A stretch of DNA of 64,000 nt, taken from contig NW_026783070.1 in assembly GCF_031769215.1 (NCBI RefSeq), forward strand, positions 1 through 64,000. Direction: 5' to 3'. Under the pieces are notes generated by a model. It saw only the letters and a list, made by a program, of their open reading frames with translations. It searched no databases and was not told the origin of the DNA. Source of the DNA: Ylistrum balloti (lineage: Eukaryota). Every line of letters starts with the position of its first letter. Position 1 is the stretch's first letter. Of the stretch, positions 8,818-31,679 are shown piece after piece. Both the position numbers and the translations under genes were made by a program.

Positions 8818-8863
8818 TAGCCTTGATAATACAAGCAGTCAGGTTCATGGTGCTAACCCTATT

Positions 8864-10979: not shown

Positions 10980-11142
10980 GATCAGTCAAGTGTGACCATT
11001 GATGTACCGTGTACCGTCTCCTGTATAAATCAGTCAAGTGTGACCATTGATGCACTGTGTACCGTCTCCTATATAAATCAGTCAAGTGTGACCATTGATG
11101 CACTGTGTACCGTCTCCTATATAAATCAGTCAAGTGTGACCT
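10980..11142. repeat. 48-bp tandem repeat, ~3.3 copies
   Basis: ATCAGTCAAGTGTGACCATTGATGCACTGTGTACCGTCTCCTATATAA repeated. Confidence 0.9.
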
Positions 11143-11619
11143 ATAAATCTTTTAAACTTTGAAACAGATTATATTTGTAAAACAAATGCTGATCGATTTC
11201 GGGTTAAGTCATATTTGTTCTTTTCAAAATATAACTACTATGAACAAAACAGATTTACATTCTCTTTCTAAAAAACCAAGATGGCTGCCAGAGAATACAG
11301 TCATCGTGAACAAAGCATCATGGAAACGAAGTTATAAGAAACATTCTACTTGCCGAACTTTTCTAGATTGTTATCTCGTAATCTTGAGAAATATAAGTCT
11401 ACTTTCTCTTGATTAAAATACTCTTGGGATTCTCAGGACTAGGTGGATCAACAGGAGCAGAAGGAAACCATCCCATAATACAAACCTCTTTCAAGATGAC
11501 GTTGTGAAAACTAACCTGACAGTCTAAATACACACGTTACAAGCATGCCAGAACTCCGTAACGTCATTAGAATTAACTGACAGTCCAAATACACCATCTC
11601 AGGTAACATCATCCAAGGA

Positions 11620-12222
11620 GTCAGTTATCTCAAGTAACATCCTCCCAGGAAGACCACTATCTCGGGTAACATCCTCTCAGGAAGACCACGATCTCGGGTA
11701 ACATCCTCTCAGGAAGACCACGATATCGGGTAACATCCTCTCAGGAAGACCACTATCTCGGGTAACATCCTCTCAGGAAGACCACTATCTCGGGTAACAT
11801 CCTCTCGAGAAGACCACGATCTCGGGTAACATCCTCTCAGGAAGACCACGATCTCGGGTAACATCCTCTCAGGAAGACCACGATATCTGGTAAAATCCTC
11901 TCAGGAAGACCAGGGTCATGGGTAAATTCCTTTCAGGAAGACCAGGGTCATGGGTAAATTCCTTTCAGGAAGACCAGGGTCATGGGTAACATCCTCTCAG
12001 GAAGACCACTATTTCGGGTAACATCCTCCCAGGAAGACCAGGATTTTTGGTAACATCCTCACAGGAAGACCGCTATCTTGGGTAACATCCTCTCAGGAAG
12101 ACCACTCTCTCGGGTTCATCCGCTCAGGAAGACCACTCTCTCGGGTTCATTCCTCAGGAAGACCAGTGTCATGGGTAACATCCTCTTAGGTCTTCGCTAC
12201 CTCGGGTTCATCCTCTCAGGAC
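11620..12222. repeat. 32-bp minisatellite, ~18 copies
   Basis: Unit CTCAGGAAGACCACGATCTCGGGTAACATCCT with variants. Confidence 0.95.
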
Positions 12223-14555
12223 TAGTCAAATCTGGTTCTATTTTTTAAAACACTCCTCTTAGAAGAGATTCAGCATCTCCAACCTCATGAGAATATTACA
12301 ATCAACAGTAAGTGGAATAATATTTCTCAAGATAACAATCTAGAAATGTACAATGGGATCTAATGTTTCATGTGGCATACGACCATCTTGAATGATGCAC
12401 CATAGGAGCGAAAAATATACTATAGAATCATCATACCTACTATTTGGACATACTATTATAGATACCAGAATCTACAAGAAGGACATGTGTACTTTCAATT
12501 TGTAATTACACTTACTAAATAATGTCAGTAACTTTATTGAAAAATTAGCTTAATTACTATAAGCATTTAAATTTTTGAAATATTACTTTTTTTAGAGTAG
12601 TAAAACACCCGTACAATTTTTGCTGTTAGGAATTATTTGTGGTGTTCTTTGGTCTGTTTTGGTATGTTTTTCCTACCAATGTATAAAATGTAGCATCAGA
12701 CCATTTGTATAGAAGATGACCTCTTACAGTACATACATATGCCTGCGTGAAGTCCTAATTGTTAACATTGATGTACTAGACACCGTCTCTTAAATTGGCC
12801 AGTCCCAAGTGACCTATAACAGTGTACAGTCTCGTGTGTCGATATCGTATGATCCATCATTTTGGCTTTGTGTGATAACATTTACTTTTGAATTCAATCT
12901 TGTCCGATGTTGTTCTGGCTTTAAATTTGTAAAATAATGATATTCCTCATAAATCAAATTGAAAGGTTTTAAACTTTGCTTACAAGAAAGGCCATCAAAC
13001 TTGTGGAATCAGTATCATTTACCAGAACGTCACCTGAAAGTTTACAATTTTGTTAAGAATAGATCATCTTCATATATTTAACAATGTATGATTTGACAAG
13101 TAAGACAGATATTAAAACATGGAATACATTTGTAAAAAAAATAACAAAAATAGCCCACCATTTTAGTATATATAGATGTGACTCTTGTAATGTTTTACAA
13201 AACCCGAGTTATGCCAGATCGTGGTTTTTGTGTTGTATATAAATGTTGTTGATCATGCATATAATGATATATTACAGACTGTACAACAGACGCCTAAGTA
13301 TATAAGTATTCACATGTGAGATGGTGTCAGTGTACTTCCGGTCTGTGTTATCTATGCCGACATTAGACCTACAATGCGGGACAATATCCAGACGTCATCA
13401 TTTCTGTGCATTTTTCGACGGAAGTGAATTAAGTATCAATGTTGATGTATATTAATGAAAGCCAATAATTTTATCATTTGCTTGCTGAGGACAAGCGCTG
13501 ATTGGTCAAAAACATACAATTTTATCCAATCCCGGAATATGCTTCTGGATTGGGTGATGAATGTACCATCTTATAGTGTAAATTAAAGAAATCCCAATGA
13601 AATGATGTCATAACTGAATCCCCTTCATGTAATAAACATTCATATTATGAAACTGGTCTGAATATTTTTCCTGTCGATGCAAACGAAGAAACCTAATATT
13701 GTTTTATAAATGCAGAAAAAACTCCTGATTTTTTCACTGTAAATAACACTGTTGGTCTGTTTGTGCTGTTCGGAACAATGACGAAGTGTTCCTCAGTTTA
13801 GGCCCTTTCACAAACTCTCATAACATCTGCTGTTATCAGTTGGAAAGCCGTGTGTAAGTCACTGAAATATATCTGCCATCTATAAATTAAAAAACTCTTT
13901 TTTATCAGGTTAACCTTCACCATCGCCAATCTATAAAGGACTTGGAAAGCTACTCTCAAACCTCAAGACACCGACGCAGTTCTATTTACTAAACAGTGCA
14001 ACAGCTAGCTGTTGTATACCATAGTGTAGAGTGTTATATAAGTGACAGAACGTTATAAATTGTTACTTTGTATGTAGAATATGACTGAGAAATTCACGCC
14101 ATATCATAGATGTCTTAACACTTGTCATTTTTGCCCTAAAATTCTACATCAGAGAAGTATTTAGTTGCATATAGATGATGCTTGTGTTTGATATCAATTC
14201 TACATTTGTGTTGTCATGGTAATACGTTTGGACTATCTATCGATTGTTAGAATAAATATTTCGATCTGGAAAACCTCTTTGTTTTATTTGACAAGTCGTT
14301 CAATTATATCAAATCATATCTGTGTTCCTGCTACAAAATCCTACAAAAGCTACATGTGTTTGTTCATATCACCAAGATTGAGCAAACACGTGTTAATTAT
14401 AGTTATCCATAACTAATTAACTTAATCCTTAATTTTAAATGTGTGTTGAGATGCCCATAGATCGATAAATGCATTCTATGGGTTTTGTTATAAAAGCGCG
14501 ATTAGGTTTGGTGGTTTTTTTCGTTCGACGAAAGTGCTGCCGAAGCTACGCTACT

Positions 14556-15226
14556 GCGGCTACAGGAAAATCCCGACTAAGTACAGACTCCGTCGTACGT
14601 AACCGCGGCTATAGGAAAATCCCGACTAATTACAGACTCCGTCGTACGTAACCGCGGCTACAGGAAAATCCCGACTAAGGACAGACTCCGTCGTACGTAA
14701 CCGCGGCTACAGGAAAATCCCGACTAAGGACAGACTCCGTCGTACGTAACCGCGGCTACAGGAAAATCCCGACTAAGGACAGACTCCGTCGTACGTAACC
14801 GCGGCTACAGGAAAATCCCGACTAATTACAGACTCCGTCGTACGTAACCGCGGCTACAGGAAAATCCCGAGTAAGTACAGACACCGTCGTACGTAACCGC
14901 GGCTACAGGAAAATTCCGACTAATTACAGACTCCGTCGTACGTAACCGCGGCTACAGGAAAATCCCGACTAAGTACAGACTCCGTCGTACGTAACCGCAG
15001 CTATAGGAAAATCCCGACTAATTACAGACTCCGTCGTACGTAACCGCGGCTACAGGAAAATCCCGACTAAGGACAGACTCCGTCGTATGTAACCGCGGCT
15101 ACAGGAAAATCCCGACTAATTACAGACTCCGTCGTACGTAACCGCGGCTACAGGAAAATCCCGACTAAGTACAGACTCCGTCGTACGTAACCGCGGCTAC
15201 AGGAAAACCCCGACTAAGTACAGACT
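14556..15226. repeat. 49-bp CpG-rich minisatellite, ~13.5 copies
   Basis: Unit GCGGCTACAGGAAAATCCCGACTAAGTACAGACTCCGTCGTACGTAACC. Confidence 0.97.
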
Positions 15227-15665
15227 CGCACGCAAAACCAGCTTTCAGGATCTGATTCAAGATTTAATTGGCATTCGTCACACTAGTGTGTAAAATAAGA
15301 AGTTAAAACAGTCTACAGGTTGGAACAGATCGTGTCGGAATGTTTGATATACATTGATAAAGAGTTTGTAGAGTTCAGCGAGCTGAATCATAAAAAAAAC
15401 ATAGAAAAACAAAGTTAGGCTGTCTTGAACACCTTCTATAGATAACCAAGAAATAAATTACATGTCGTTAATAACCACTTATTACGTCATTGTAGCCGAG
15501 TTTAATTTGTGTTATCTGTACAGTTCGTACCCGTGTATGTATATACTGCGATTCACGTGTTCAGATCGCGTAATAAGACAATTTGTTACTATGATGGTGT
15601 CGAGAATTTCTAGCTATCTATCACTACAACTTCCAAACGTCTTTTTTCTTTCTTTTTTTTTGTAT

Positions 15666-15760
15666 GTCGTAGTGGTGTAGTGGTAAGGCAGTTAAAGGAT
15701 TTCTTGGCTAGGCAATTTGGAGTCGAAGACCGTGAGTTTTAAGCCCGGTAAGGGCGTGGG
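15666..15760 (+). mobile_element. Possible degenerate tRNA-derived SINE head
   Basis: A-box-like TGGTGTAGTGGT and B-box-like GAGTTTTAAGCCC with tRNA-like spacing; no complete cloverleaf evident. Confidence 0.35.
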
Positions 15761-15986
15761 TGAAAACGATCTTACTTCAAAAATTGCGTGCAAATATATA
15801 TACATTGTTTATATTTGTATAACCTATATAAACCATATACTTACATATTCCAAAGCTTCCTTTTATCAGTTTAACAGGTACTCTCTTCTGTAGTTACCAA
15901 TATTTAGCTCGAAGATTCCGTATCAAGACACGCACAATGAGACAAAAATGGCTTAAACACATGGGGGAGGGTTAGCATAGAGAAAT

Positions 15987-17054
15987 GTGTTGCAAATACT
16001 GAAACTTGGAAAGGCCTCGGGCCAGGATGAAATTAGTCATTATATGCTAAAAAATGTTTGTAATACTGTTTGTAAACCACTTGAGTTACTATTTAATATG
16101 TCACTCTCTGTTGGTGTTTATCCCAAAGTATGGAAATTAGCTAAAGTTATGCCGTTGTTTAAAAAGGGTGATAGACACTCTCCTTCTAACTACAGGCCAA
16201 TATCTCTACTGTCTACTGTTGGCAAAGTTTTCGAACGTGTAGTTTTCAATCATATCTATAATTATTTCATAGAAAATTCGTTGTTTTATCAATATCAGTC
16301 TGGTTTCTTGCCCGGACATTCTACTTTATATCAACTGATTGAAATGTATCATAATACATGTCTAGCACTCGAAGAAAAAAAAACATACATGTATCGTCTT
16401 TTGTGACATCTCAAAAGCTTTTGATAGAGTTTGGCATAAAGGTTTGTTTATTAAGTTAAAATCCTATGGAATAGACGGAGAGCCATTGGCTTGGTTGAAA
16501 GACTATTTACATCAGAGACATCAAAAAGTGTGTTTTAATGGGTCTTTTTCTAAATTAGGTTTTATAGATGCTGGGGTTCCACAGGGTTCTATTCTTGGCC
16601 CTCTTTTATTTCTAATTTATATTAATGATATAGTAGATGTATTCGATTCAGCTTCAAGACTTTTCGCAGATGACACTTCTCATCAATGTTCTTCTTCCTC
16701 CTATCAAGAAATTCAAACTATCCTTAACAAAGACCTTGAATCTCTTAATTCATGGGCTAAAACATGGCTTGTAACTTTTAATCCTGACAAAACGGATGTA
16801 CTTTTCATCTCTAATAATAATGAAATAGAAGGTTTATTAGAATTAGAATTTGATGGAAATATTTTAGATTTCACTGATAGTCACAGACATCTAGGTGTTA
16901 TTCTCAACTCAAGTATTAACACATTGTGATTTAGATTTGATATTGTATGGTAATAATGATCTTTCTCTTGAAACAAACTCGAAAATTGTTTTGAATGTCC
17001 AAAACTTTATTAAATCTAGTAATAGGTTCACTTGACGTCATCCGCCTAAACTAC

Positions 17055-17108
<54 letters not shown>

Positions 17109-17281
17109 CCTCCCCGCAAAATATGTAGTTAGTGTATTTGTTGCCATATGGCTATTGCGTTGTCTAACTATATTTTGTTATATATTGGGGAAAGGGTGTT
17201 TCATAAGTTGTAATAACTTGTACCTAATCCTCTGGTAATAATTTCTGCAATAAAATATGTTTAATTAAAAAAAAAAAAAAT
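15987..17281 (+). mobile_element. 5'-truncated CR1-like LINE with internal deletion, poly(A) tail and 11-bp TSD, copy 1
   Basis: RT motifs NYRPISLL, QSGF, (frameshift) CDISKAFDRVWH, GVPQGSILGPLLF, LFADD; ORF2 C-terminus LILYGNNDLS...FIKSSNRFT*; AATAAA at 17249; A-tail; CATAGAGAAAT at 15976-15986 and 17282-17292. Confidence 0.92.
17047..17103. repeat. (CT)n microsatellite in LINE 3' UTR
   Basis: Direct reading; the second copy is at ~21098-21152. Confidence 0.95.
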
Positions 17282-17485
17282 CATAGAGAAATCTCATCAA
17301 TCTTTAAAATGTTCGCTTTTGAATCCTCCATCCCTCGACGGATTTCATCCAATAGTACACTTGCCTCAAATCAAGATTGAGGTGCGTTTTAAGAACTCTG
17401 GGACATGTGTATTTGGATTGTTAATTACGTCATCTTAACGATGACGTCATTATTACGTCATACAACTAGTGCGTACTGATGAAGC

Positions 17486-18238
17486 ATGGAACTGAGTGTC
17501 GTTTGTATATTTTCGTTTTTCCATTTGGCCGTTTCCACTATGGATATGAATATGAAGGAAATGGAATTTATTGCCAACGAGTTGTCGCCAAAGGAGTGTA
17601 AAATGCTGGCAGAGGCGTTACATAGAAAGAAATTTCAGTTGCGGCAACCTGTAACAGGCGTTGGCGAAGCAGATGGTACTTGTCTGAGCAAGTTACTCCA
17701 TTGGGATAGCACGGAAGGCAAAGGTAAAACATTCAACATGCTTGCATTAAGACTTAGTCAAATTGGTAGAAATGATATTGCGGACAAAATTTCAAAAGAA
17801 ATATATCACGAACAAGCTGAAGCATTACATAAAAATTTCCTGGACGATCCATTTCGATCTATGATAGTCACCAACTCAATTCTACTGACCAATGATCAAC
17901 CTGTTGAAACTATTGGGAAGTCAAATGTGGTCGATAATTCTTTATCAACTACTGGGCTGGCGATGGTCATTATAGGGACTCTGTCTTTATTCTTGCTTAT
18001 AGTGGTCGTTTTTCGTAAATGTTGTCCTGGTTGTTTTTGTCGGACTTGGCGAAGATTGGCTCCAGATACCGTGGTCGATGTATGTGATCTTTGTTGTGGG
18101 GAAGTCCATGTGTGCTGTGTTGAGATGAAAAGAGATTATAAACAGTTTGTTGTTGGGGTAAAGCCAGTGGAAGAGGATGTTCTAGCACTACTGCCAAGTA
18201 TAGAGGAATCGGTAACGATACAGCCAAACGCCGAGTGA
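17486..18238 (+). CDS. TMDD1: Single-pass membrane protein with signal peptide, N-terminal death-domain-like fold and Cys-rich tail (TMDD1/C12orf81-like), copy 1, 250 aa
   Basis: Hydrophobic N-terminus; IANELSPKEC and CLSKLLHW...FNMLALRLSQIGRNDIADKISKEIYHEQA resemble the recalled TMDD1 death-like domain; TM ~157-179; CC-rich juxtamembrane tail. The family assignment is from memory, not from a search. Confidence 0.65.
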   Translation: MELSVVCIFSFFHLAVSTMDMNMKEMEFIANELSPKECKMLAEALHRKKFQLRQPVTGVGEADGTCLSKLLHWDSTEGKGKTFNMLALRLSQIGRNDIADKISKEIYHEQAEALHKNFLDDPFRSMIVTNSILLTNDQPVETIGKSNVVDNSLSTTGLAMVIIGTLSLFLLIVVVFRKCCPGCFCRTWRRLAPDTVVDVCDLCCGEVHVCCVEMKRDYKQFVVGVKPVEEDVLALLPSIEESVTIQPNAE

Positions 18239-19232
18239 GCTTGTTAACTAATTACCAAATAAAGAGGACTCGGGAACTGTACAACAAAACACCGATTGAA
18301 CTTGTTAATTACTACCAAATAAAGAGGAATCAGGTACTGTACAACAAATCGCCGAGTAAGCTTGTTGACTTACTACCAAATAAAGAGGAATCAGGTACTG
18401 TACAACAAAACGCTGAGTGAACTTGTTAACTGACTACCAAATACAGAGGACTCAGGTACTGTACAACAAAACTCCGAGTGAGCTTGTTAACTGACTACCA
18501 AGTAAAGAGGAATCAGGTACTGTACAACAAAACACCGAGTGAAGTTGTTAACTGACTACCAAATACAGAGGACTCAGGTACTGTACAACAAAACGCCGAG
18601 TGAACTTGTTAACTGACTACCAAATAAAGAGGACTCGGGAACTGTACAACAAAACGCCGAGTGAACTTGTTAACTGACTACCAAATAAAGAAGACTCAGG
18701 TATGTACAACAAAACGCCGAGTAAGCTTGTTGACTTACTACCAAATAAAGAGGACTCAGGTACTGTACAACAAAACGCCGAGTGAACTTGTTAACTGACT
18801 ACCAAATAAAGAGGACTCGAGAACAACAAGACGCCGAGTGAACTTGTTAACTGACTACCAAATAAAGAGGACTCAGGTACTGTACAACAAAACGCCGAGT
18901 GAACTTGTTAACTGACTACCAAATAAAGAAGACTCAGGTATGTACAACAAAACGCCGAGTAAGCTTGTTGACTTACTACCAAATAAAGAAGACTCAGGTA
19001 TGTACAACAAAACGCCGAGTAAGCTTGTTGACTTACTACCAGATAAAGAGGACTCAGGTACTGTACAACAAAACGCCGAGTGAACTTGTTAACTGACTAC
19101 CAAATAAAGAGGACTCAGGTACTGTACAACAAAACGCCGAGTGAACTTGTTAACTGACTACCAAATAAAGAAGACTCAGGTATGTACAACAAAACGCCGA
19201 GTAAGCTTGTTGACTTACTACCAAATAAAGAG
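18226..19232. repeat. 60-61-bp minisatellite, ~16 copies, beginning inside the TMDD1-like 3' end
   Basis: Unit AAAACGCCGAGTGAACTTGTTAACTGACTACCAAATAAAGAGGACTCAGGTACTGTACAAC. Confidence 0.96.
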
Positions 19233-19758
19233 ACACAGTACTGCTTAGGATATGTTCTGCCACCACCAATCCGATAATGAATTCAAACCGCAGAATTGCA
19301 CAGAGGCGGCCGCCAGCCTTGTCATCACCATCATCCTTTAGATGGTCAAGGCTGCTTACAACAACTGATAAGGATGCTTTGAACGTTTTGAGGGCATCTG
19401 CCCTGCTCGACCATCTAGTTTCGCAGAGAGTCCTTAATTTAGTCCTTTTTTCCATTTCGTACCGTGCGTTTTCGTTCGTAGCAAGATCGTTCTTGAATTG
19501 GAGAAGTCGTTTTGCAGAATAGTCGAAAGAAAACGCGATATCTTGGACAGTTGCCATCACATTCCGTACACAAGCCAAAGAGGAAGAATGTACGAGAGCT
19601 AAGTTCAATTGGTGAGACTTGCAATGAACGTAGGTCGCGTAAGGTGCTGTTTCTTTGATTATTGCTTGGACACCTTGAACTTTCCCGACATGTTTGCAGC
19701 ACCGTCGTAGCCCTGGGCCCGAAGTTTGTTGATATCAAAGCCGTTCTGCTGCAACACG
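19229..19758 (-). mobile_element. 530-bp internal fragment of the hAT transposase, copy of 25863-26392
   Basis: Constant offset 6634; apparently identical sequence (YDGA-MSGK...HCKSHQLNLALV...RWSSR). Confidence 0.95.
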
Positions 19759-20024
19759 AGTCGAAGACCGTGAGTTTTAAGCCCGGTAAGGGCGTGGGTG
19801 AAAACGATCTTACTTCAAAAATTGCGTGCAAATATATATACATTGTTTATATTTGTATAACCTATATAAACCATATACTTACATATTCCAAAGCTTCCTT
19901 TTATCAGTTTAACAGGTACTCTCTTCTGTAGTTACCAATATTTAGCTCGAAGATTCCGTATCAAGACACGCACAATGAGACAAAAATGGCTTAAACACAT
20001 GGGGGAGGGTTAGCATAGAGAAAT

Positions 20025-21094
20025 GTGTTGCAAATACTGAAACTTGGAAAGGCCTCGGGCCAGGATGAAATTAGTCATTATATGCTAAAAAATGTTTGTA
20101 ATACTGTTTGTAAACCACTTGAGTTACTATTTAATATGTCACTCTCTGTTGGTGTTTATCCCAAAGTATGGAAATTAGCTAAAGTTATGCCGTTGTTTAA
20201 AAAGGGTGATAGACACTCTCCTTCTAACTACAGGCCAATATCTCTACTGTCTACTGTTGGCAAAGTTTTCGAACGTGTAGTTTTCAATCATATCTATAAT
20301 TATTTCATAGAAAATTCGTTGTTTTATCAATATCAGTCTGGTTTCTTGCCCGGACATTCTACTTTATATCAACTGATTGAAATGTATCATAATACATGTC
20401 TAGCACTCGAAGAAAAAAAAAGATACATGTATCGTCTTTTGTGACATCTCAAAAGCTTTTGATAGAGTTTGGCATAAAGGTTTGTTTATTAAGTTAAAAT
20501 CCTATGGAATAGACGGAGAGCTATTGGCTTGGTTGAAAGACTATTTACATCAGAGACATCAAAAAGTGTGTTTTAATGGGTCTTTTTCTAAATTAGGTTT
20601 TATAGATGCTGGGGTTCCACAGGGTTCTATTCTTGGCCCTCTTTTATTTCTAATTTATATTAATGATATAGTAGATGTATTCGATTCAGCTTCAAGACTT
20701 TTCGCAGATGACACTTCTCATCAATGTTCTTCTTCCTCCTATCAAGAAATTCAAACTATCCTTAACAAAGACCTTGAATCTCTTAATTCATGGGCTAAAA
20801 CATGGCTTGTAACTTTTAATCCTGACAAAACGGATGTACTTTTCATCTCTAATAATAATGAAATAGAAGGTTTATTAGAATTAGAATTTGATGGAAATAT
20901 TTTAGATTTCACTGATAGTCACAGACATCTAGGTGTTATTCTCAACTCAAGTATTAACACATTGTGATTTAGATTTGATATTGTATGGTAATAATGATCT
21001 TTCTCTTGAAACAAACTCGAAAATTGTTTTGAATGTCCAAAACTTTATTAAATCTAGTAATAGGTTCACTTGACGTCATCCGCCTAAACTACCC

Positions 21095-21157
<63 letters not shown>

Positions 21158-21330
21158 CCTCCCCGCAAAATATGTAGTTAGTGTATTTGTTGCCATATGG
21201 CTATTGCGTTGTCTAACTATATTTTGTTATATATTGGGGAAAGGGTGTTTCATAAGTTGTAATAACTTGTACCTAATCCTCTGGTAATAATTTCTGCAAT
21301 AAAATATGTTTAATTAAAAAAAAAAAAAAT
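20025..21330 (+). mobile_element. CR1-like LINE with 11-bp TSD, copy 2
   Basis: Same as 15987-17281; TSD CATAGAGAAAT at 20014-20024 and 21331-21341. Confidence 0.92.
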
Positions 21331-21534
21331 CATAGAGAAATCTCATCAATCTTTAAAATGTTCGCTTTTGAATCCTCCATCCCTCGACGGATTTCATCCT
21401 ATAGTACACTTGCCTCAAATCAAGATTGAGGTGCGTTTTAAGAACTCTGGGACATGTGTATTTGGATTGTTAATTACGTCATCTTAACGATGACGTCATT
21501 ATTACGTCATACAACTAGTGCGTACTGATGAAGC

Positions 21535-22287
21535 ATGGAACTGAGTGTCGTTTGTATATTTTCGTTTTTCCATTTGGCCGTTTCCACTATGGATATGAAT
21601 ATGAAGGAAATGGAATTTATTGCCAACGAGTTGTCGCCAAAGGAGTGTAAAATGCTGGCAGAGGCGTTACATAGAAAGAAATTTCAGTTGCGGCAACCTG
21701 TAACAGGCGTTGGCGAAGCAGATGGTACTTGTCTGAGCAAGTTACTCCATTGGGATAGCACGGAAGGCAAAGGTAAAACATTCAACATGCTTGCATTAAG
21801 ACTTAGTCAAATTGGTAGAAATGATATTGCGGACAAAATTTCAAAAGAAATATATCACGAACAAGCTGAAGCATTACATAAAAATTTCCTGGACGATCCA
21901 TTTCGATCTATGATAGTCACCAACTCAATTCTACTGGCCAATGATCAACCTGTTGAAACTATTGGGAAGTCAAATGTGGTCGATAATTCTTTATCAACTA
22001 CTGGGCTGGCGATGGTCATTATAGGTACTCTGTCTTTATTCATGCTTATAGTGGTCGTTTTTCGTAAATGTTGTCCTGGTTGTTTTTGTCGGACTTGGCG
22101 AAGATTGGCTCCAGATACCGTGGTCGATGTATGTGATCTTTGTTGTGGGGAAGTCCATGTGTGCTGTGTTGAGATGAAAAGAGATTATAAACAGTTTGTT
22201 GTTGGGGTAAAGCCAGTGGAAGAGGATGTTCTAGCACTACTGCCAAGTATAGAGGAATCGGTAACGATACAGCCAAACGCCGAGTGA
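21535..22287 (+). CDS. TMDD1: TMDD1-like death-domain membrane protein, copy 2, 250 aa
   Basis: Differs from copy 1 by T135A and L170M plus one synonymous change seen. Confidence 0.65.
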   Translation: MELSVVCIFSFFHLAVSTMDMNMKEMEFIANELSPKECKMLAEALHRKKFQLRQPVTGVGEADGTCLSKLLHWDSTEGKGKTFNMLALRLSQIGRNDIADKISKEIYHEQAEALHKNFLDDPFRSMIVTNSILLANDQPVETIGKSNVVDNSLSTTGLAMVIIGTLSLFMLIVVVFRKCCPGCFCRTWRRLAPDTVVDVCDLCCGEVHVCCVEMKRDYKQFVVGVKPVEEDVLALLPSIEESVTIQPNAE

Positions 22288-23752
22288 GCTTGTTAACTAA
22301 TTACCAAATAAAGAGGACTCGGGAACTGTACAACAAAACACCGATTGAACTTGTTAATTACTACCAAATAAAGAGGAATCAGGTACTGTACAACAAATCG
22401 CCGAGTAAGCTTGTTGACTTACTACCAAATAAAGAGGAATCAGGTACTGTACAACAAAACGCTGAGTGAACTTGTTAACTGACTACCAAATACAGAGGAC
22501 TCAGGTACTGTACAACAAAACTCCGAGTGAGCTTGTTAACTGACTACCAAGTAAAGAGGAATCAGGTACTGTACAACAAAACACCGAGTGAAGTTGTTAA
22601 CTGACTACCAAATACAGAGGACTCAGGTACTGTACAACAAAACGCCGAGTGAACTTGTTAACTGACTACCAAATAAAGAGGACTCGGGAACTGTACAACA
22701 AAACGCCGAGTGAACTTGTTAACTGACTACCAAATAAAGAAGACTCAGGTATGTACAACAAAACGCCGAGTAAGCTTGTTGACTTACTACCAAATAAAGA
22801 GGACTCAGGTACTGTACAACAAAACGCCGGGTGAACTTGTTAACTGACTACCAAATAAAGAGGACTCAGGTACTGTACAACAAAACGCCGAGTGAACTTG
22901 TTAACTGACTACCAAATAAAGAGGACTCGGGAACTGTACAACAAAACGCCGAGTGAACTTGTTAACTAACTACTAAATACAGAGGACTCGAGAACAACAA
23001 GACGCCGAGTGAACTTGTTAACTGACTACCAAATAAAGAAGACTCAGGTATGTACAACAAAACGCCGAGTAAGCTTGTTGACTTACTACCAAATAAAGAA
23101 GACTCAGGTATGTACAACAAAACGCCGAGTAAGCTTGTTGACTTACTACCAGATAAAGAGGACTCAGGTACTGTACAACAAAACGCCGAGTGAACTTGTT
23201 AACTGACTACCAAATAAAGAGGACTCAGGTACTGTACAACAAAACGCCGAGTGAACTTGTTAACTGACTACCAAATAAAGAGGACTCGGGAACTGTACAA
23301 CAAAACGCCGAGTGAACTTGTTAACTAACTACTAAATACAGAGGACTCGAGAACAACAAGACGCCGAGTGAACTTGTTAACTGACTACCAAATAAAGAAG
23401 ACTCAGGTATGTACAACAAAACGCCGAGTAAGCTTGTTGACTTACTACCAAATAAAGAAGACTCAGGTATGTACAACAAAACGCCGAGTAAGCTTGTTGA
23501 CTTACTACCAGATAAAGAGGACTCAGGTACTGTACAACAAAACGCCGAGTGAACTTGTTAACTGACTACCAAATAAAGAGGACTCAGGTACTGTACAACA
23601 AAACGCCGAGTGAACTTGTTAACTGACTACCAAATAAAGAGGACTCGGGAACTGTACAACAAAACGCCGAGTGAACTTGTTATCTAACTACCAAATAAAG
23701 AGGACTCGGGAACTGTACAACAAAACACCGAGTGAACCTGTTAACTAACAAC
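22275..23752. repeat. 60-61-bp minisatellite, ~24 copies
   Basis: Same unit as 18226-19232. Confidence 0.96.
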
Positions 23753-25090
23753 AGGAATGATACATTAAAATGCCGCCTGCCAGAATTGTCTATATACTGC
23801 CAGGTCGCCATATGATTTTTTTTCAGCCAACTACAATGTTGGAGGAATCGGGATCAGGACAACGAAACGCCTTGGCTGATGAGGTTATGTATAGAGAATA
23901 GCACAGTAACAAAGCGTCATGTAAACGTGTCCGTTTACTGTTAGATAGAGAGCAATAGTATAATACACATAGCACTTGTCAATCTATCAACGAAACCCTG
24001 TTTGTCTATTGAAAACAGTGTTCAATACAACGACTCTTTAGATCATGGATATATTTCTAAACACACACAAGATCAAGAAAAGACACAAATGAACTCTAGA
24101 TGATGTGATAAATTATCGTTTTTATTTTCTTCTTTTTTATAGATTTTGTCCGCAAGGATTATCTGCATCAAATAAAATGCATAAAAGCAATATCAAACGA
24201 GTGCGGGGTTTCTCATAATTTTGTTAGTAGTAGGCTGTGTAGTGAAAGTAGGAGGCTGGCGAAGCAAGCCGACCCGAGCTGCAACGCTGCGAGGTGCGGG
24301 TGGCCTGCCGTGTACGTTAGTCGTGTACGGAACGTTATTACGGAACATGATTGGTGTAGGCGACCACATGATCGAAGAAGCCGGTCAAATTGGCTGACGA
24401 CCGGCTCTTATGGAAAACCCTGGAGTGTCAATGCACATCGTTTAACTGTCACGTCTTTGCAAATTTGAGCAATAGATAAGCTACTATTGAAAACTGTACG
24501 TAAATCGACTCTTCTGTGACGTCACTCTTTTTATACGGTTCTTTTTATATTATGCGCTGTCTATATCCGGTTTTGGAGTTTACCTTGCACCTTGGCGTTT
24601 TTAATGTGTTTGCTTATCACAAGAATGAAGCTTAGGAATAAGGCTGGGAATTTTGTTAACGAGGTAAATCTAATAAGGACGGTATACTAACTACGAGAAG
24701 AAACGCACGACGGAGGCTCAGCAGAGCTATGGACACGGATATTGTATTATTATAATCCATTTCGTGCCACTTACAATTTGATCAAGATTATTAATGATTG
24801 TGCAGAAAGTAAACGCTCGTAACAGGACAAAATATAGACAGAACAGCCAGTGGCGTAGCAAATGTTTTTTTAAGAGTATATGTTTTTAAGAGGAAGCCCA
24901 GGGGTAAAGCTCCAATGGGTGTGTGTGTGGTGGGGGTGGGGAGAGCCCCCTGAAGCCGTCGGGATTTAGCTTATCAGAAATATCTATTCTATTTACACCA
25001 ACACATTTTTTATTCAACAAAAACAACAAAATGCAGTAATTATTTTTGCTAAAAATACATAATCCCTGTTTCATCAACTATATGTCAAAC

Positions 25091-28000
25091 TTAGATAAAG
25101 TGTGCCAGTCTCTTGCCCGATTTCGCGTTAGCAAAGGTTTCCACTGCCCTGCAAATATCTACTTCCTGCTCTCTATGAATATTCAACGTTGCCAGTGATG
25201 CTAATCTCTCCGTTGTCATTGTCGACCGAAGGTAGGTCTTTACCCTTTTCATACTACTGAACGACCTTTCTGCAGTGGCAGTTGTCACAGGCATCGCCAG
25301 CAGAAGTGATGGTATGTTTGTAATATTTGGATATAGCTGAGGGTCAGTGTGATTTAGACAAGTGATGATGTCTGCTGGCCTTTCGTCAGTTGGCACCATT
25401 GACCATCGAGCCTTCCAACGTTCGATTTCTTGCCGGAAAGTGTCAGGATCGGTCAGATCGGCATCGTAGGTGTTGGCATCGTATATTGCTTGAATCATTT
25501 CTGCATTAAGATGCGTATCAAGCTTTTCAGGAAGAAGGGCTTCACCTTTGAACCTGCCCTCACTGTCAACCAGTCTTATTTCCAGTTCGGTTATCAGGTG
25601 ATCCAGGAAGGCAAGGTACAGTGTTACTTTCCAATAGTCCTTTGTGTTGTTCACGACTGGATTAGCGCGTTGACGTTGTATTCCAGCCCTTCGTAGTGTT
25701 GATGGTGTAATATAAAACTCGGCGGCAATTGTAACTGCTTCATCGTATAGTGCGTCCCAGACCGTATCATCTGCGCGTTCATTACGTAACAACTGAATGA
25801 TAACTTTACTTTCTTTCAATGCCTGCAATAGATTGCACTTCGGTGTCTGGAGATAATTTGACAGAGACACAGTACTGCTTAGGATATGTTCTGCCACCAC
25901 CAATCCGATAATGAATTCAAACCGCAGAATTGCACAGAGGCGGCCGCCAGCCTTGTCATCACCATCATCCTTTAGATGGTCAAGGCTGCTTACAACAACT
26001 GATAAGGATGCTTTGAACGTTTTGAGGGCATCTGCCCTGCTCGACCATCTAGTTTCGCAGAGAGTCCTTAATTTAGTCCTTTTTTCCATTTCGTACCGTG
26101 CGTTTTCGTTCGTAGCAAGATCGTTCTTGAATTGGAGAAGTCGTTTTGCAGAATAGTCGAAAGAAAACGCGATATCTTGGACAGTTGCCATCACATTCCG
26201 TACACAAGCCAAAGAGGAAGAATGTACGAGAGCTAAGTTCAATTGGTGAGACTTGCAATGAACGTAGGTCGCGTAAGGTGCTGTTTCTTTGATTATTGCT
26301 TGGACACCTTGAACTTTCCCGACATGTTTGCAGCACCGTCGTAGCCCTGGGCCCGAAGTTTGTTGATATCAAAGCCGTTCTGCTGCAACACGTCTAAAAT
26401 GAGCACAGCGATGGTTTGGCCTTTCGTGTTTTCAGCTGTAACAAAACAGAGGAAGTCCTCTCGGACTGATACCAAAGGACCTTCATAGACAAGATATCTT
26501 ATACAGATCGAGAGCTGTTCCTTTGTGGCGGTATCGGTACATTCGTCGGCTAAAACAGCAAAGTAGCGCGATCGTTGAATAGATTCTGATATTTTTCTGA
26601 CTATCTGAGCAGCGCAAATATCAAGTAGTTCGTTTTGAATATCTGAAGATGTATATTTATATACTACATTCGGGTTCTTCAAGTGGTTTTCTAAAATGAC
26701 GTCCCCTTTACTCAACATGGTCAAAGTGGCTATGAAGTTACTCTTCCTCAGTATGACCACGAATGGCAATATTTTGTCTGCCACATAGTAACAGTACCTC
26801 GATAATACGGCCAATGATATGCCTGGTATTCTTAACATCACTTTTGTGTGACGAGGAAAGTTTCGAAATGATTGAATCTTTATTGCCGGTAACAACATCC
26901 ATAAAATTTTCTGCACGTGTTTTGCTTTTTTTTTTTTTTTTTAATTTTTTCCCCTCAGCTCAGCAATCATTATTAGGGGCTGCCAGAGTTGAGGAGCTCT
27001 GGGTTGTGCACGTGTTTTGCAGTTATTGTGAATTTCGGAACACTCATGGCGTTTCACTAACATGGATAAGTTCACCCAGTCTGATACTCCTGGCTTTACG
27101 AAGAGACGAGTTTTATCAGCCTTATCTCCAAACAATAAACAACAAGCACAGAACACAGAGTCATCCGATACTGAGTATCTCATCCAGCTGTGGTCATTTA
27201 ACCAGCTATGATTGAATTTTCTGTCTCGTCCATAAATCTTTCTGTAAACAAACAAACAAAAATAACAGTCACACCGTCCCCTAATATATGTATATCCAGG
27301 CAGTAAGATTTTTTCCCCGCAGATTATTAATTGAATGGCAATGCACAGTGAAACTTCATCTTTAGACCACTTCAAAATCAAAACAAATTAGTTCAGTCTC
27401 TGAAAGCCTTGTTCTAACGCATTTTGTAATAATTCGGCAAAATGTAATGTTACAATTTGCGTTAAAGCAAATAATGCATATTGTAATACAACGCATTTTG
27501 TAATAATTCGGCAAAATGTAATGCGTTGTAACAAAGCCTTCTATACGTCTTCTTACTAAATAACACCAACTCAGAATTGAGAATAACTCCAAAACCAATT
27601 TACCACCGAGTATACCTGTCAGATATGTGACCAATCAACAATACATGTATTCATGTACATGTACTGTATTTGTGCAATTTTTAGAGCTCTAAATATGTTA
27701 CACGACAGTCGTCTGTACTACGTATACGTCATGTGCTCTTGTATATAGCAATGTTTTTTTTTTTATAAAATTGGTATTCTAATTTCAATGCTTTCGATAT
27801 GCACTTTATTTCAAAATTCTCAGTGGGGACTAAATAGGGTCGGCAACATGCAATATGTACGTAAGCAATGTTTCATACCAGTTAATGTAAAAAACAACAG
27901 AACCAATACTTGTATTTACATTTATTGTCGCCATACGAATTTTCAAAAACTTCAATTTTGTCGAGTCTTACAATTACCGTGACAAGATACAAGAACCTTT

Positions 28001-28746
28001 ATTTAACGTCGTGTTTACAACAATATAACTTTAGTTCAGTAGAGCTATTCTTACGACGAAAGCTAGATTCATTTTTATTATGGAAAAAAATATTATCCGT
28101 TCCTTGAATTCACCTTACATGACAGTATTACTCCCTTTCCGTTTATGTGGGTCCGGTCGGCAGGAGTGGTGAGTGATTGGGGCCGAGGGTTTGGTGTACT
28201 AATTTAGTGATTCATCGATGGAAATCTAATCATGTTTTGAGTTCTTCTATCTTTTCCAAGTTTTATTTCCCCTTGTTGAAGAAAAAAATATTTCCGAGCA
28301 TTGCATCCGCATTACAGTGCATGGATATATTTGCTACGCGATTTTCATGCTAATAGTTATTTTTTGCATTTAACTTAAACTGAGTCTGTGCGAATCACAA
28401 AGAATTGGTTTTAGAGACATACAAATAACAGTATATTAGGTATTGTTTAATAAAATCATCAACTTGTTTACCTGACTGGAAAATTGAATTTGTTAGCAGT
28501 ATCCCACTTTGTCGCCAAAAGAGAACGACGAACACTGTCATCCTTCAGTTCGTTTTCTGACATGACGTTGATATCAGAATAAGGAGGTTTATACTCGGAA
28601 GGCTGAGAGTTGTCTTGAGATGTGTCACTAGACATAATTTCAGAAAGGCTGGTCTTCTTGTTTTCACTTCCTAAATTGTCTTGTGATACCACAGATCCAC
28701 ATGTCCGGTTTACGTTAAAAAGTTCGGTAATTTTACGCTGTGCCAT
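25091..28746 (-). pseudogene. hAT transposase pseudogene (TTF-type zinc finger, DUF4371-like core, hAT dimerisation domain), two exons
   Basis: Exon 1 is 28746-28472 and GT-AG intron 28471-27242 joins in frame (FPVR-KIYG). Motifs WMRYS...FCACC, LCGRQNIAIRGH, DECTD, YDGA, HCKSH, RWSSR, TTATAERSFSSMKRVK. Frameshifts at ~26742 and ~26310, insertion at 26926-27006. Confidence 0.92.
26926..27006 (-). mobile_element. 81-bp polyadenylated retroposed insertion with 14-bp TSD inside the transposase
   Basis: TGCACGTGTTTTGC at 26912-26925 and 27007-27020; T-tract next to the left copy; removing the insertion plus one TSD restores the transposase frame (CKTRAENFMD). Confidence 0.88.
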
Positions 28747-30436
28747 TTTTTAAGTTTAGCGGGTACAAACTATATAAACCAGAAATAGAATTGTTACAAC
28801 AATAACCAGAACCAAATATATTGAAGGGCTAAATATTCCGTATCGTAATGTATATATATAGATATACTGCATACGGTCGGAAAAGAAAAAATGATAGTTT
28901 GATGCTATATATATATATTTGTTTTTTTGTACTTTTATTTCAAACTTTTATTTTAACGTAAAAATAAAAGTAAGAAAAAATTTCTCAAGCGAATTTGAGT
29001 GTAAGCTCAAGCATACAAGCATACATTATTGCTACGCCACTGACAGCGCTCGTTTTGTTTTCTTTGAGAGCGTAGTTATATCATATTCTAGATAGAACTT
29101 GTGAAGTGCTGAACATAGGTAATGGAGAAGTACAAGGCCTTTCTGATGTAGCTACCCGGAATCCTCCTTAAAGTATAATGTCATTTCCAATACTACTAGC
29201 AGTATAACCGATCATGATCGCAAAAAAAAGTATGGTGAGGTCTAATTTTATGTCAAAGTTTTAATGAAATTGAAAATAATGGGTGATTATCCCATTAAAG
29301 GTGAAATATTAAGGGAAAACATGGGTTTTGAAGACAATTTTGCAAATAAAGGAGACAAGATTTGACCAAAAAAAGTCGACAATCATTTTCAAATTACCAA
29401 AACATATAAAATCCAAATCCAAACAGAGAGTATCGCTCTGACGTCTTCCAAATATTTAAAATATCGATTTAACGAATATAACACAAAACGAGTTCAGTGA
29501 TTACTCCTTGTTATAATCACTCTGAACGTTGTTTAATAAAGCCACAAGTAAGAACATGTTTTTGTTCAATAAAAGTAATTTACTAAATAAAAAACAGACT
29601 AATTTTAACAATATTGATTTGAACCTGGTATATGTCAACTAGATACAGCGATGAACAAAGTCACAATGTTCAAAAATTCGTTTTACCTTTTACAGAAATA
29701 TTCATCTAATTTCCTCCTGAATGTCGTCAATGAATTCCTTACATTTGTTTTACATTTTCAAGACAACAAACGTGACGGACATTGAAACTATAAAGATCTC
29801 TCCTGTTCGAGCGTGCTCTACTGAATTATTCAGAAGATACCAGACGATTCATTACAGACTCTATAATACATGCAATTTGGAATTCTGGTATTGTAAATCT
29901 TACACGAAACACGACGCTATAATAAAAGAGTTATTTTGATAACCACATCAAGTTATCTCGACATTATCTTTTCAGACTTTCAGTACTAAAGATGTTTAAA
30001 TATTACACCACGTGGCGATGTGTAATCAGCCAGGCAGGCGTATGTACCAGTAATATCGCAGGCCTGCGGAAGGCATTCTAATGTTCTGTGTGATGAGGCT
30101 CCGAATGTAATGTTAGGCCATGATATGTATCTATCGGTGATAAAATATTTTCATATCAAAAGGGGCTATTTTCACCGAAATATGCAACTACAAACACGCG
30201 CGGAGAGAGCAGCAGTCCCCCCAACCCCACCCCCTGGACTGATATCCTGGTAACTTCAACACAAAACGATATATCATCTACTGCTCGCTTCTCTACATGT
30301 AACACCGTAACCTGGTTCATTCACGTTTCATCTGTACACCGACAACAGCAGCAGTCTTTTTTGTAAATTCGCCTGTTATGTGTTTGGAGTATAACGTTAT
30401 CAATGGTAGAACTAAAACTGTGATGAAAAACCAGAA

Positions 30437-31633
30437 ATGTGTAGAACATCGGCCATACTACCGCTCGGAATATTAACTCTTGTTGTTCTCTCTAGTGCCT
30501 ACGTACAAAATACTCACGAGTTGTATACGACGCTTTTTGAGAACTACACGAACATATTGAGGCCTGTGCAAAACGAACAAGAAACTGTTCGAGTTTCTGT
30601 TAAATTTCTTCTTCGAGGAATTAGCGAATTTGATGAAGTGCATGGCCAGTTGTCATTGGCTACTGCTGTGGACTTACGGTGGCGGGACACAACTCTAAGC
30701 TGGAATAGGTCCGAATACAGTCCGCGCGCTCTGGTCCTACCCGAAACACAAATTTGGACACCACGTTTAGCTCTGTCCAATCCCACTGACCGAATACTTC
30801 TATTCTTTGAAGACTCGTTTCCAGTTCGGTTAAATTCGGATGGCTCCGTGATTTGGCTGCAAGGCGGTACTATTATTTCTACCTGTGTGCCCAATGTGGA
30901 GAAGTACCCTTTCGATGTTCACAAATGTTACTTGGTTATACTAGTAATACCTTACACCCGTGCTGAGGTCCAACTTTACCCGTCAATCGATCTGTCCACC
31001 TTTGAGAAGTTTGGTGAGTGGGAGCTCGGTAATAATAGTATCGAAGAACAATTATATGGCGGATTTTTCTCCTCTATTGTGATTAGTTTAGAAATCAAAA
31101 GGAGACCGGAATTTTCTCTCTTAAGCACAATCTTGCCAATACTGTTCCTAGGTGTTCTCAACGCTTGTGTGTTCCTTCTACCACCAGAGCAAGGGGAACG
31201 CGTGTCCTATGCCCTCACTGTCCTTCTATCCTTTGCGGTCTTTCTGTCCATTATCAGTAGTGTCATGCCAAAGAACTCCGAGCCTGTACCTATTCTATGT
31301 TATATCATCACTGCCATGATGGCCATGAGTGGACTCAGCACTATATGTACTGTATTGTGTCTCCGCTGGTACTTCGCCGATCAGAAACAATCAGTTCCTT
31401 ATCTACTGACCATAATGTGCCGAAAACGGAAAGGAAAACGGAGACACCAGAATTGTGACATTACCAGTGACACGGCACCTCACAAAGAGAACCAAACAGA
31501 GTCAACACAACTCGGGGAATGTCGAGTCACGTGGAGGGACGTGTCTGCGACCTTTGATATTGTATTTTTTGTCTTTTATTTAGTAGCGATTTTCGTTCTT
31601 GTTTTTATATATTTGGTACTTGTTATACAATGA
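30437..31633 (+). CDS. Intronless Cys-loop receptor subunit (divergent nAChR-like), copy 2, 398 aa
   Basis: 10 amino-acid differences from 7621-8817; same motifs. Confidence 0.95.
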   Translation: MCRTSAILPLGILTLVVLSSAYVQNTHELYTTLFENYTNILRPVQNEQETVRVSVKFLLRGISEFDEVHGQLSLATAVDLRWRDTTLSWNRSEYSPRALVLPETQIWTPRLALSNPTDRILLFFEDSFPVRLNSDGSVIWLQGGTIISTCVPNVEKYPFDVHKCYLVILVIPYTRAEVQLYPSIDLSTFEKFGEWELGNNSIEEQLYGGFFSSIVISLEIKRRPEFSLLSTILPILFLGVLNACVFLLPPEQGERVSYALTVLLSFAVFLSIISSVMPKNSEPVPILCYIITAMMAMSGLSTICTVLCLRWYFADQKQSVPYLLTIMCRKRKGKRRHQNCDITSDTAPHKENQTESTQLGECRVTWRDVSATFDIVFFVFYLVAIFVLVFIYLVLVIQ

Positions 31634-31679
31634 TAGTCTTGATAATACAAGCAGTCATGTTCATGGTGCTAACACTATT

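What the first reader, a model, noticed from the sequence alone, without database searches (positions are those of the whole stretch)
15720..26392. Complex A-C'-A duplication whose junction is a 530-bp piece copied from the nearby dead transposon (template-switch signature)
Seen: 15720-19232 is repeated from 19758. Between the copies lies 19229-19758, an apparently exact copy of 25863-26392 from inside the hAT element 6.6 kb downstream. The junctions have 4-bp (AGAG) and 1-bp (G) microhomology and no TIR or TSD. The copied piece carries the same inactivating frameshift (~26310 / ~19676), so it was templated from this dead copy or a sibling, not from an active element. Inference: two replication template switches (FoSTeS/MMBIR-like) duplicated an intact TMDD1-like gene. 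The left junction lies in the minisatellite, which may have stalled the fork.
Basis: partly seen in the sequence, partly recalled or inferred. Interest (0 to 1): 0.72.

Follow-up and report, generated by a model that had tools for sequence, protein, structure and literature searches.

The report
Tandem duplication with templated hAT insert
In this scallop assembly a 3.5-kb segment carrying a small death-domain membrane gene is present twice in tandem, joined by 530 bp copied from a dead transposon 6.6 kb away; this is the known signature of replication template switching, but four other sequenced samples lack it and the reads behind the assembly could not be checked.

Summary
A1 (15720-19232) recurs from 19758. 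The spacer 19229-19758 is 530/530 identical to 25863-26392, which lies inside a hAT element (24848-29042). The junctions share AGAG and G.

The spacer carries the local copy's private 1-bp deletion and two private substitutions. The other genomic hAT copies are only about 98% identical, so the local copy is the donor. No TIR, TSD, flanking repeat or TE edge lies at any breakpoint.

The structure fits a two-switch, microhomology-mediated copy-and-paste event (FoSTeS/MMBIR-like). A 10.7-kb tandem duplication followed by a 6.6-kb deletion would give the same product.

New negative evidence: in Logan contigs of four runs from two studies, contigs run from each native context straight through the breakpoints. 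Depth at the right junction is fully accounted for by the two abutting contigs. A has the same depth as its upstream flank. The duplication is therefore not fixed and was not detected in these samples.

It is either a private or polymorphic variant of the assembled animal or an assembly/library artefact.

The copies differ by about 0.3% plus repeat-unit indels, so the event is not brand new, or else haplotypes were mixed.

The scan had already noted this same stretch once (s1-232118). This is an ordinary kind of event; interest is low to moderate.

The parts
15228..15719 (.). Native upstream flank (X) of the duplicated segment, outside the duplication
   Evidence: Unique in the genome apart from a distant 73% match that runs across 15720. 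In run X1 a contig runs from this flank straight into A; its loose end matches 15690-15719.
15720..19232 (.). Copy A1 of the duplicated segment: unique DNA, a LINE fragment, (CT)n, the 250-codon ORF, and the truncated minisatellite
15985..17275 (+). 5'-truncated LINE fragment inside A1 (RVT_1 ORF pieces 15987-16406 and 16444-16929). Its twin lies in A2 at about 20023-21324. It belongs to a young family with 95-99% copies on many contigs.
   Evidence: Pfam RVT_1. Genome-wide matches start at query position 736 = 15985 and end near 17275. The left edge of A (15720) is therefore not a TE edge.
17486..18238 (+). 250-codon ORF, copy 1: signal-like N-terminus, weak death domain, one TM helix, Cys-rich tail. 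The last 16 codons lie in the first minisatellite unit.
   Evidence: the ORF listing. Pfam Death, E 1.7e-4, 22.1 bits, just under the 22.6 cut-off. Atlas neighbours are 'Death domain-containing' 0.96, 'C12orf81-like' 0.91 and 'TMDD1-like' 0.89.
18190..19232 (.). 61-bp-unit minisatellite of A1, cut off by the left junction 16 bp into a unit
   Evidence: TRF; unit map; gapped alignment to the A2 array
19229..19232 (.). Left junction: AGAG shared by the minisatellite unit and hAT position 25863-25866
19229..19758 (+). C': 530-bp templated insert in direct orientation, identical to 25863-26392. It carries the 1-bp deletion at 19675/19676.
19758..19758 (.). Right junction: a single G shared by hAT 26392 and A 15720
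19758..23749 (.). Copy A2 with the full-length minisatellite (22239-23749). The part matching A1 ends near 23460 in the gapped alignment (23282 ungapped).
21535..22287 (+). 250-codon ORF, copy 2. It differs from copy 1 by T135A, L170M and one synonymous change.
24848..29042 (-). hAT-superfamily element with 14-bp TIRs (CAGTGGCGTAGCAA). The transposase is broken into ORFs 26941-27381, 26293-26916 and 25091-26242. No clean 8-bp TSD was seen.
   Evidence: Pfam DUF4371 and Dimer_Tnp_hAT. Limits come from comparison with the copy on contig C289. Only the 14-base identity of the two ends was read off, not how far complementarity extends beyond them.
25863..26392 (+). Donor segment C inside the transposase coding region, 1,015 bp from the left TIR and 2,650 bp from the right. 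It carries the private 1-bp deletion at 26309/26310.

Best explanation
A real but non-fixed germline structural variant carried by the assembled scallop. It is a 4,038-bp net gain made in one replication or repair episode by two microhomology-primed template switches (FoSTeS/MMBIR-like copy-and-paste).

Proposed course, all of it inferred: a nascent strand copying X-A ran about 1.2 kb into the 61-bp minisatellite and disengaged. It re-primed on AGAG 6.6 kb ahead, inside the neighbouring dead hAT, and copied 526 more bases. It disengaged again, re-primed 10.7 kb back on a single G at 15720, and then copied A, the whole minisatellite and everything downstream.

The product is X-A-M'-C'-A-M-Y-hAT, with a second open copy of a 250-codon TMDD1-like ORF.

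Shown: the anatomy, the donor identity, the absence of TE ends or long homology, and absence of the variant from four other samples.
Inferred: that the junctions exist in the animal's DNA, that the event was a single one, and that it was replicative.
For: - The structure and junctions are exact.
- The donor is the local hAT copy. The insert is 530/530 identical to it and shares a 1-bp deletion plus two substitutions that are absent from the copies on C71 and C289 and from the hAT contigs of four runs.
- The insert is internal to the element. The left edge of A lies in unique DNA 265 bp from the LINE fragment. There is no copy of C upstream of A1.
- A graph assembler cannot make these joins, because they overlap by only 4 bp and 1 bp. 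Random ligation chimeras would not bring together three pieces from one 11-kb neighbourhood, all in direct orientation (inference).
- A1 and A2 differ by substitutions, not homopolymer indels, so two distinct sequences were really read.
- Zero differences in 530 bp of C' is compatible with the ~0.25-0.3% A1/A2 divergence (expected 1.3-1.6 differences, P(0) about 0.2-0.27; own calculation).
- Germline and somatic copy-and-paste events with local templates are an established class (PMC7025897). Bivalves show massive presence/absence variation (PMC7653742), so absence from other animals is not surprising.
Against: - No independent read or contig supports either junction. In runs X1, X2, X4 and X5 (two studies) contigs pass through 15719|15720 and 26392|26393 without branching. 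Depth in bin 19730-19834 equals exactly the two abutting contigs. A has the same word depth as the contig that is mostly X flank.
- The source reads of the assembly were not among the runs offered.
- C1213 is a small (111.8 kb), satellite-rich contig, the kind where errors concentrate.
- The 0.3% divergence between copies means the event is not brand new, which sits a little uneasily with absence from all four samples. Those samples carry nearly one shared haplotype, so they are few independent chromosomes.
- One junction has only 1 bp of microhomology.
- No structure-forming potential was found at the breakpoints.
Confidence: 0.5

Rival explanations
1. Assembly or library artefact. The animal has one copy of A, and the A-C'-A path comes from a chimeric long read (for example in-vitro polymerase template switching) or from an error in threading two haplotypes. 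On this reading A1 and A2 are the two alleles.
For: - The junctions are absent and A is single-copy in four other samples.
- The contig is small and repeat-rich, and it begins in a satellite.
- The left junction lies in a minisatellite, where long-read alignment is weakest.
- The A1/A2 divergence (4 differences in the 1,185 bp that are comparable) is of the same order as the distance of either copy from the runs' haplotype (7-9 differences). That is what two alleles would look like.
- No second contig represents this locus, so both haplotypes may have been forced into one path.
Against: - Overlap-based assemblers need real overlap to join. Here the joins share 4 bp and 1 bp.
- There is no N or gap between the copies, unlike typical haplotype false duplications.
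- Two breakpoints 530 bp apart, all three pieces local and co-oriented, are not what ligation or in-silico chimeras look like. A single chimeric read rarely survives consensus.
- No other near-identical large duplicate exists in the contig.
Confidence: 0.27
2. A real variant made in two steps. First came a simple tandem duplication of 15720-26392 (10,673 bp; junction 26392|15720 with 1-bp microhomology). Later a ~6.6-kb microhomology-mediated deletion in the first copy, from the minisatellite to 25862 (AGAG), left only 530 bp of the duplicated hAT.
For: The final sequence is identical to that of the one-step model. Both junction types are ordinary for end joining. The ~0.3% divergence between copies leaves time for a second event.
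Against: This route needs two independent rare events confined to the same 11 kb on one lineage. No intermediate (full 10.7-kb duplicate) is present in the assembly or in the four runs. C' shows no difference from C, although that is also expected under the one-step model.
Confidence: 0.17
3. A transposon- or homology-driven rearrangement: hAT alternative transposition (as with maize Ac/Ds), unequal crossing-over between repeats, or LINE-mediated transduction.
For: A hAT element and a LINE fragment both lie in the affected region.
Against: - The inserted piece is internal coding sequence, 1.0 and 2.65 kb from the TIRs.
- There is no TIR or TSD at either junction.
- There is no copy of C upstream of A1, as unequal crossing-over would require.
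- The LINE fragment starts 265 bp inside A and ends 900 bp before the array.
- The local transposase is broken.
Confidence: 0.02

Closest known systems
FoSTeS / MMBIR complex duplications (Lee, Carvalho and Lupski 2007; Hastings et al. 2009, cited from my own knowledge). The class is summarised as germline 'copy-and-paste' events from fork stalling and template switching in PMC7025897.
   Same: A tandem gain whose junction holds a short segment templated from nearby sequence. All pieces are in cis and local. Microhomology at the joins is 4 bp and 1 bp, with no long homology and no TE ends.
   Different: Single-event origin and a replicative mechanism are inferred only. The insert is co-oriented, whereas many described cases include inversions. 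One join has only 1 bp of microhomology. The variant is not validated by independent reads.
'Local 2-jump' / templated-insertion structural variants of cancer genomes (PMC7025897)
   Same: Two local rearrangement junctions are phased on one derivative chromosome, with low-level copy gain of local templates.
   Different: Those are somatic human events at kilobase to megabase scale. This would be a germline (or at least assembled) 4-kb event in a bivalve.
Tandem duplications made by alternative transposition of hAT elements (maize Ac/Ds; own knowledge)
   Same: A hAT element sits next to a tandem duplication, and hAT sequence lies at the duplication junction.
   Different: In those cases the junction carries element termini and target-site duplications. 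Here it carries an internal 530-bp coding piece with no TIR or TSD, and the element is dead.
Heterotype false duplications in long-read assemblies of heterozygous genomes (own knowledge)
   Same: Two ~99.7% identical copies lie side by side in a small contig of a heterozygous bivalve, and the locus is single-copy in other samples.
   Different: False duplications usually sit at contig ends or gaps, or are joined through real overlap. Here there is a gap-free novel junction with a templated insert.
Gene presence/absence variation in bivalves (PMC7653742)
   Same: A gene copy is present in one individual's assembly and not detected in others.
   Different: That work describes the pattern genome-wide in a mussel. 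It gives no breakpoint mechanism, and this case is unvalidated.

Membership tests
FoSTeS/MMBIR-type complex tandem duplication | Two or more breakpoint junctions in cis on one derivative, with copy gain | tested here: met
   In the assembly, junctions at 19229-19232 and 19758 lie 530 bp apart between two copies of A.
FoSTeS/MMBIR-type complex tandem duplication | Junction insert templated from nearby genomic sequence | tested here: met
   530/530 identity to 25863-26392, 6.6 kb away. The 1-bp deletion and two substitutions it shares with that copy are absent from the other copies.
FoSTeS/MMBIR-type complex tandem duplication | Microhomology, not long homology, at each junction | tested here: met
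   AGAG and G. No extended similarity lies around any breakpoint. The 1-bp case is no more than chance would give.
FoSTeS/MMBIR-type complex tandem duplication | The rearrangement exists in genomic DNA (independent reads, raised depth) | tested here: not met
   There is no junction contig and A is at single-copy depth in four runs from two studies. These are other animals. The source animal's reads were not available, so this does not refute presence in that animal.
FoSTeS/MMBIR-type complex tandem duplication | All junctions formed in one replicative event | not testable with these tools
   The two-step route (duplication, then deletion) gives the same sequence. Population long reads are needed.
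hAT alternative-transposition duplication | Element termini (TIR) and target-site duplication at the duplication junction | tested here: not met
   The TIRs are at 24848 and 29042. The piece is 25863-26392, with no TIR or TSD at 19229 or 19758.
NAHR / unequal crossing-over duplication | Direct repeats flanking the duplicated unit, with a recombinant repeat at the junction | tested here: not met
   There is no copy of C upstream of 15720. C lies 2.1 kb beyond the end of A2.
Haplotype (heterotype) false duplication | Halved read depth over each copy in the source individual; a gap or contig end between copies | tested here: inconclusive
   There is no N or contig end between the copies.
TMDD1 (C12orf81) family, for the duplicated ORF | Signal peptide, death domain, single TM helix; sequence similarity to TMDD1 | tested here: inconclusive
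   Pfam Death scores 22.1 bits against a cut-off of 22.6. Atlas neighbours are death-domain, C12orf81-like and TMDD1-like clusters at 0.96, 0.91 and 0.89. No alignment-based homology search or RNA evidence was run.

The most novel reading that the evidence does not exclude
The junction is real and segregating. It would then be a base-pair-resolved germline copy-and-paste (template-switch) event in a bivalve that created an extra, still-open copy of a death-domain membrane gene. That would point to replication-based switching near minisatellites as one concrete source of the heavy gene presence/absence variation seen in bivalve genomes.
Probability: 0.45. Interest if true: 0.35.

Novelty: new member of a known kind. 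Interest (0 to 1): 0.25.

Why it matters
If real, this is a clean single-locus example of how a bivalve gene copy is gained. The donor of the junction insert is identified to the very element copy, which is rarely possible. It would also give a testable marker (two junction PCRs) for asking how often replication-based switching, rather than transposons or unequal crossing-over, underlies bivalve copy-number polymorphism. If it is an artefact, it is a useful warning: gene-gain calls from this assembly, including the 'recently duplicated' TMDD1-like gene noted elsewhere in the scan, need read-level support. Either way the mechanism class is well known, so the general significance is modest.

Tried and rejected
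- Exact-protein look-ups in public assemblies were blank for both 250-aa ORF versions and for the two chimeric ORFs that span the junctions. It was then closed, and I did not try it again.
- Searches for an allelic contig lacking the duplication found none. These used the A unique part, 7000-14500, and 23700-24900. C1213 is the only representation of the locus.
- Other hAT copies were tested as better donors and rejected. C71 has 7 differences and one gap. C289 has 8 differences and one gap. C120 is 81% identical.
- Single-strand DNA folding of all native and derived breakpoints gave z-scores of -1.0 to +1.1, which gives no support for hairpin-driven stalling.
- A self-comparison of the whole contig looked for further near-identical duplicates, as a sign of systematic false duplication. 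It found none above 98%.
- Two literature searches for the assembly's sequencing method found nothing usable.
- Transposition, NAHR and LINE-transduction models were rejected on junction anatomy.
- The big protein searches were not used, because they could not bear on the junction question.
Full report
**What is in the sequence**

The window is the first 64 kb of a 111,767-bp contig, C1213, of a 648.5-Mb assembly in 1,372 contigs. Earlier notes of the scan call the organism a saucer scallop; I did not verify that.

- 15720-19232 (A1) recurs at 19758-23282 (A2).
- 19229-19758 (C') is 530/530 identical to 25863-26392.
- The window has no N.

A contains the following, in order:
- 265 bp of unique DNA.
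- A 5'-truncated LINE fragment of a young family (15985 to about 17275, RVT_1 pieces).
- A (CT)n run.
- A 250-codon ORF (17486-18238).
- A minisatellite of 61-bp units that starts 48 bp before the ORF's stop codon.

The ORF has a signal-like N-terminus, a borderline Pfam death domain (22.1 bits against a cut-off of 22.6), one TM helix and a Cys-rich tail. Its nearest language-model clusters are death-domain, C12orf81-like and TMDD1-like. Both copies are open and differ by two residues and one synonymous change.

**How alike the copies are**

In the non-repetitive 2,467 bp the copies differ by six substitutions and an 11-bp microsatellite length change. The first ~590 bp of the arrays are identical.

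The unit maps are as follows.
- A1: 1-8, 9, 10, 9, 8, 11, 9, 8, then a 16-bp stub.
- A2: 1-8, 13, 9, 14, 8, 11, 9, 14, 8, 11, 9, 15, 16.

With unit-sized gaps allowed, the A1 tail aligns to A2 22726-23460 with four substitutions, one small indel and gaps of 56 and 117 bp. A1's array is therefore essentially a prefix of A2's, and the break lies about 290 bp before the array's end.

The differences are substitutions and repeat-unit changes, not homopolymer errors, so two distinct sequences were really read. Overall divergence is about 0.3%. At that rate 1.3-1.6 differences are expected in 530 bp. The perfect identity of C' and C (P about 0.2-0.27) is therefore unremarkable.

Short-read polishing or allelic exchange could have introduced some of the A1/A2 differences, so I would not date the event from them.

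**The junctions and the donor**

On the left, the minisatellite reads ...AAATAAAGAG and the hAT reads ...TTTGACAGAG, followed by ACACAG.... AGAG is shared.

On the right, the hAT reads ...CAACACG and A reads G AGTCGAAG.... Only G is shared.

The hAT element runs from 24848 to 29042 and has 14-bp TIRs (CAGTGGCGTAGCAA). These limits come from comparison with a 98% copy on contig C289. Its transposase (DUF4371 plus the hAT dimerisation domain) is split into three ORFs.

The copied piece lies 1.0 kb from one end of the element and 2.65 kb from the other, so no element end is involved.

Genome-wide, the piece has only four other matches:
- C' itself.
- C71, with 7 differences and a gap.
- C289, with 8 differences and a gap.
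- An 81% relative on C120.

C' and the local copy alone share a 1-bp deletion (19675/6 = 26309/10) and two substitutions. The C289 copy reads through this point in one 549-codon frame.

It holds as far as the assembly can show.

**Independent samples**

One run search returned five DNA data sets from two studies, all held as Logan contigs. I laid four of them (X1, X2 and X4 from one study, X5 from the other) on 19100-22230. They are not the source of the assembly: all differ from both A copies at shared sites (19888, 20009, 21459, 21680, 22122 and a 1-bp gap at 21366).

No listed contig bridges either junction.
- Contigs covering C' stop at 19758 and continue with TCTAAAATGAGC..., which is the hAT sequence after 26392.
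- Contigs covering the start of A are about 820 bp long, with 295 bp on A. They continue leftwards into the native X flank. This is shown explicitly for X1, whose loose end equals 15690-15719.
- At 19229 the loose ends are hAT upstream sequence.
- At 19231 the minisatellite simply goes on.

For the right junction the absence can be made rigorous. In each run the mean depth of bin 19730-19834 equals the length-weighted sum of the two abutting contigs: 25.2, 24.3, 23.1 and 12.0 observed against 25.2, 24.3, 23.1 and 12.0 computed. Nothing else is laid there.

The contig that is two-thirds X flank has the same word depth as the contig lying wholly inside A. The figures are 19.2 against 17.9, 19.2 against 17.3, 16.9 against 20.1, and 8.6 against 5.3-7.6. 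A is therefore not at double dose.

At the four A1/A2 differences in unique sequence, each run shows a single state. It is A1-like at 21400 and A2-like at 21937, 22026 and 22042.

The runs' hAT contig carries the extra C at 19675, that is, no frameshift.

Caveats:
- Contigs drop minor variants, so a heterozygous duplication, especially in X4, cannot be excluded.
- The four samples share almost one haplotype, so they represent few independent chromosomes.

Conclusion: the duplication is not fixed and was not detected outside the assembly.

**Real variant or artefact**

Several points favour a real variant.
- Joins with 4-bp and 1-bp overlap cannot be produced by overlap or graph traversal.
- Ligation and in-silico chimeras join random loci. 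They do not join three co-oriented pieces from one 11-kb neighbourhood.
- There is no gap or contig end between the copies.
- The contig holds no other near-identical large duplicate.

Other points count against it.
- There is no independent support.
- The contig is small and satellite-rich, and it begins in a 5.5-kb satellite.
- The left breakpoint lies in a minisatellite.
- The A1/A2 distance is of the same order as the allelic distance to the other samples.
- No second contig represents the locus, so both haplotypes of the animal had to be accommodated here.

I put reality in the source animal at roughly 0.7.

**Mechanism**

Given a real variant, unequal crossing-over is excluded because there is no copy of C upstream of A1. 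hAT alternative transposition and LINE transduction are excluded because no TE edge lies at any breakpoint.

Two routes remain.

(i) One episode with two template switches. Synthesis leaves the minisatellite and primes on AGAG 6.6 kb ahead. It copies 526 bases, then primes 10.7 kb back on G and continues. This is the standard FoSTeS/MMBIR reading. It matches the 'copy-and-paste' class with local templates described for germline and cancer genomes (PMC7025897).

(ii) A tandem duplication of 15720-26392, followed by a 6.6-kb microhomology deletion in copy 1.

The sequence cannot separate the two routes. I favour (i) about 3:1 on parsimony, and because no intermediate was seen.

The suggestion that the minisatellite stalled the fork is untested. 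Predicted single-strand structures at the breakpoints are no stronger than shuffles.

**Comparison, novelty and verdict**

This is a new instance of a well-known kind of rearrangement. The donor is pinned down unusually well, and the taxon is one in which gene presence/absence variation is extensive (PMC7653742). It is unvalidated and absent from four other samples.

The same stretch was already noted once by the scan from the gene's point of view (s1-232118). That note's 'recently duplicated' gene inherits the same uncertainty.

- The reads tools allowed one search and one lay, both used.

Noticed in passing
window 1-5483: The contig begins inside a ~5.5-kb tandem array with a period of about 44 bp (self-matches at 44-bp offsets, 92-98% identity). 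The assembly probably broke here. Another array lies further along the contig at C1213:95911-99178, with a period of about 28 bp.
   Followed up: partly
window 7560-9494 and 30376-32315: An older intrachromosomal duplication at 94% identity contains the intronless nAChR-like ORF (7621-8817). Partial tandem repeats of its 3' part follow at 31785-33096 (83-92%). The locus has therefore duplicated before.
   Followed up: partly
window 18190-18238 and 22239-22287: The last 16 codons and the stop of the 250-codon TMDD1-like ORF are encoded by the first unit of the 61-bp minisatellite, so the array supplies the protein's C-terminus.
   Followed up: no
window 22692-23746: The A2 minisatellite has a 359-bp higher-order repeat (about three copies at 97-98%) that A1 lacks. 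The arrays have changed by unit-scale gain or loss since they separated.
   Followed up: partly
window 24840-24847 and 29043-29050: The hAT element has perfect 14-bp TIRs but no clean 8-bp target-site duplication (AGAACAGC against ACAGCGCT; only ACAGC recurs). The C289 copy also shows none.
   Followed up: partly
window 19675 / 26309 (runs X1, X2, X4, X5): In all four public samples the hAT contig laid on this region has the extra C (no frameshift) and about twice the depth of single-copy DNA. Whether the frameshifted insertion at this locus exists in those animals at all is unknown.
   Followed up: no
window 14556-15227: A 49-bp-unit minisatellite (13.7 copies, 95% identity) lies 490 bp upstream of the duplication. 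Together with the 61-bp arrays and the satellites, this makes the contig unusually rich in tandem repeats.
   Followed up: no
window 58001-64000: There is a very strong GC skew (up to +0.62 in 58001-60000) with negative AT skew. Repeats at 58452-58946 and 60086-60583 match at 92-94%.
   Followed up: no
window 24203-24423: A ~220-bp dispersed repeat (SINE-like) has hundreds of 86-91% copies across the genome. It lies between A2 and the hAT.
   Followed up: no
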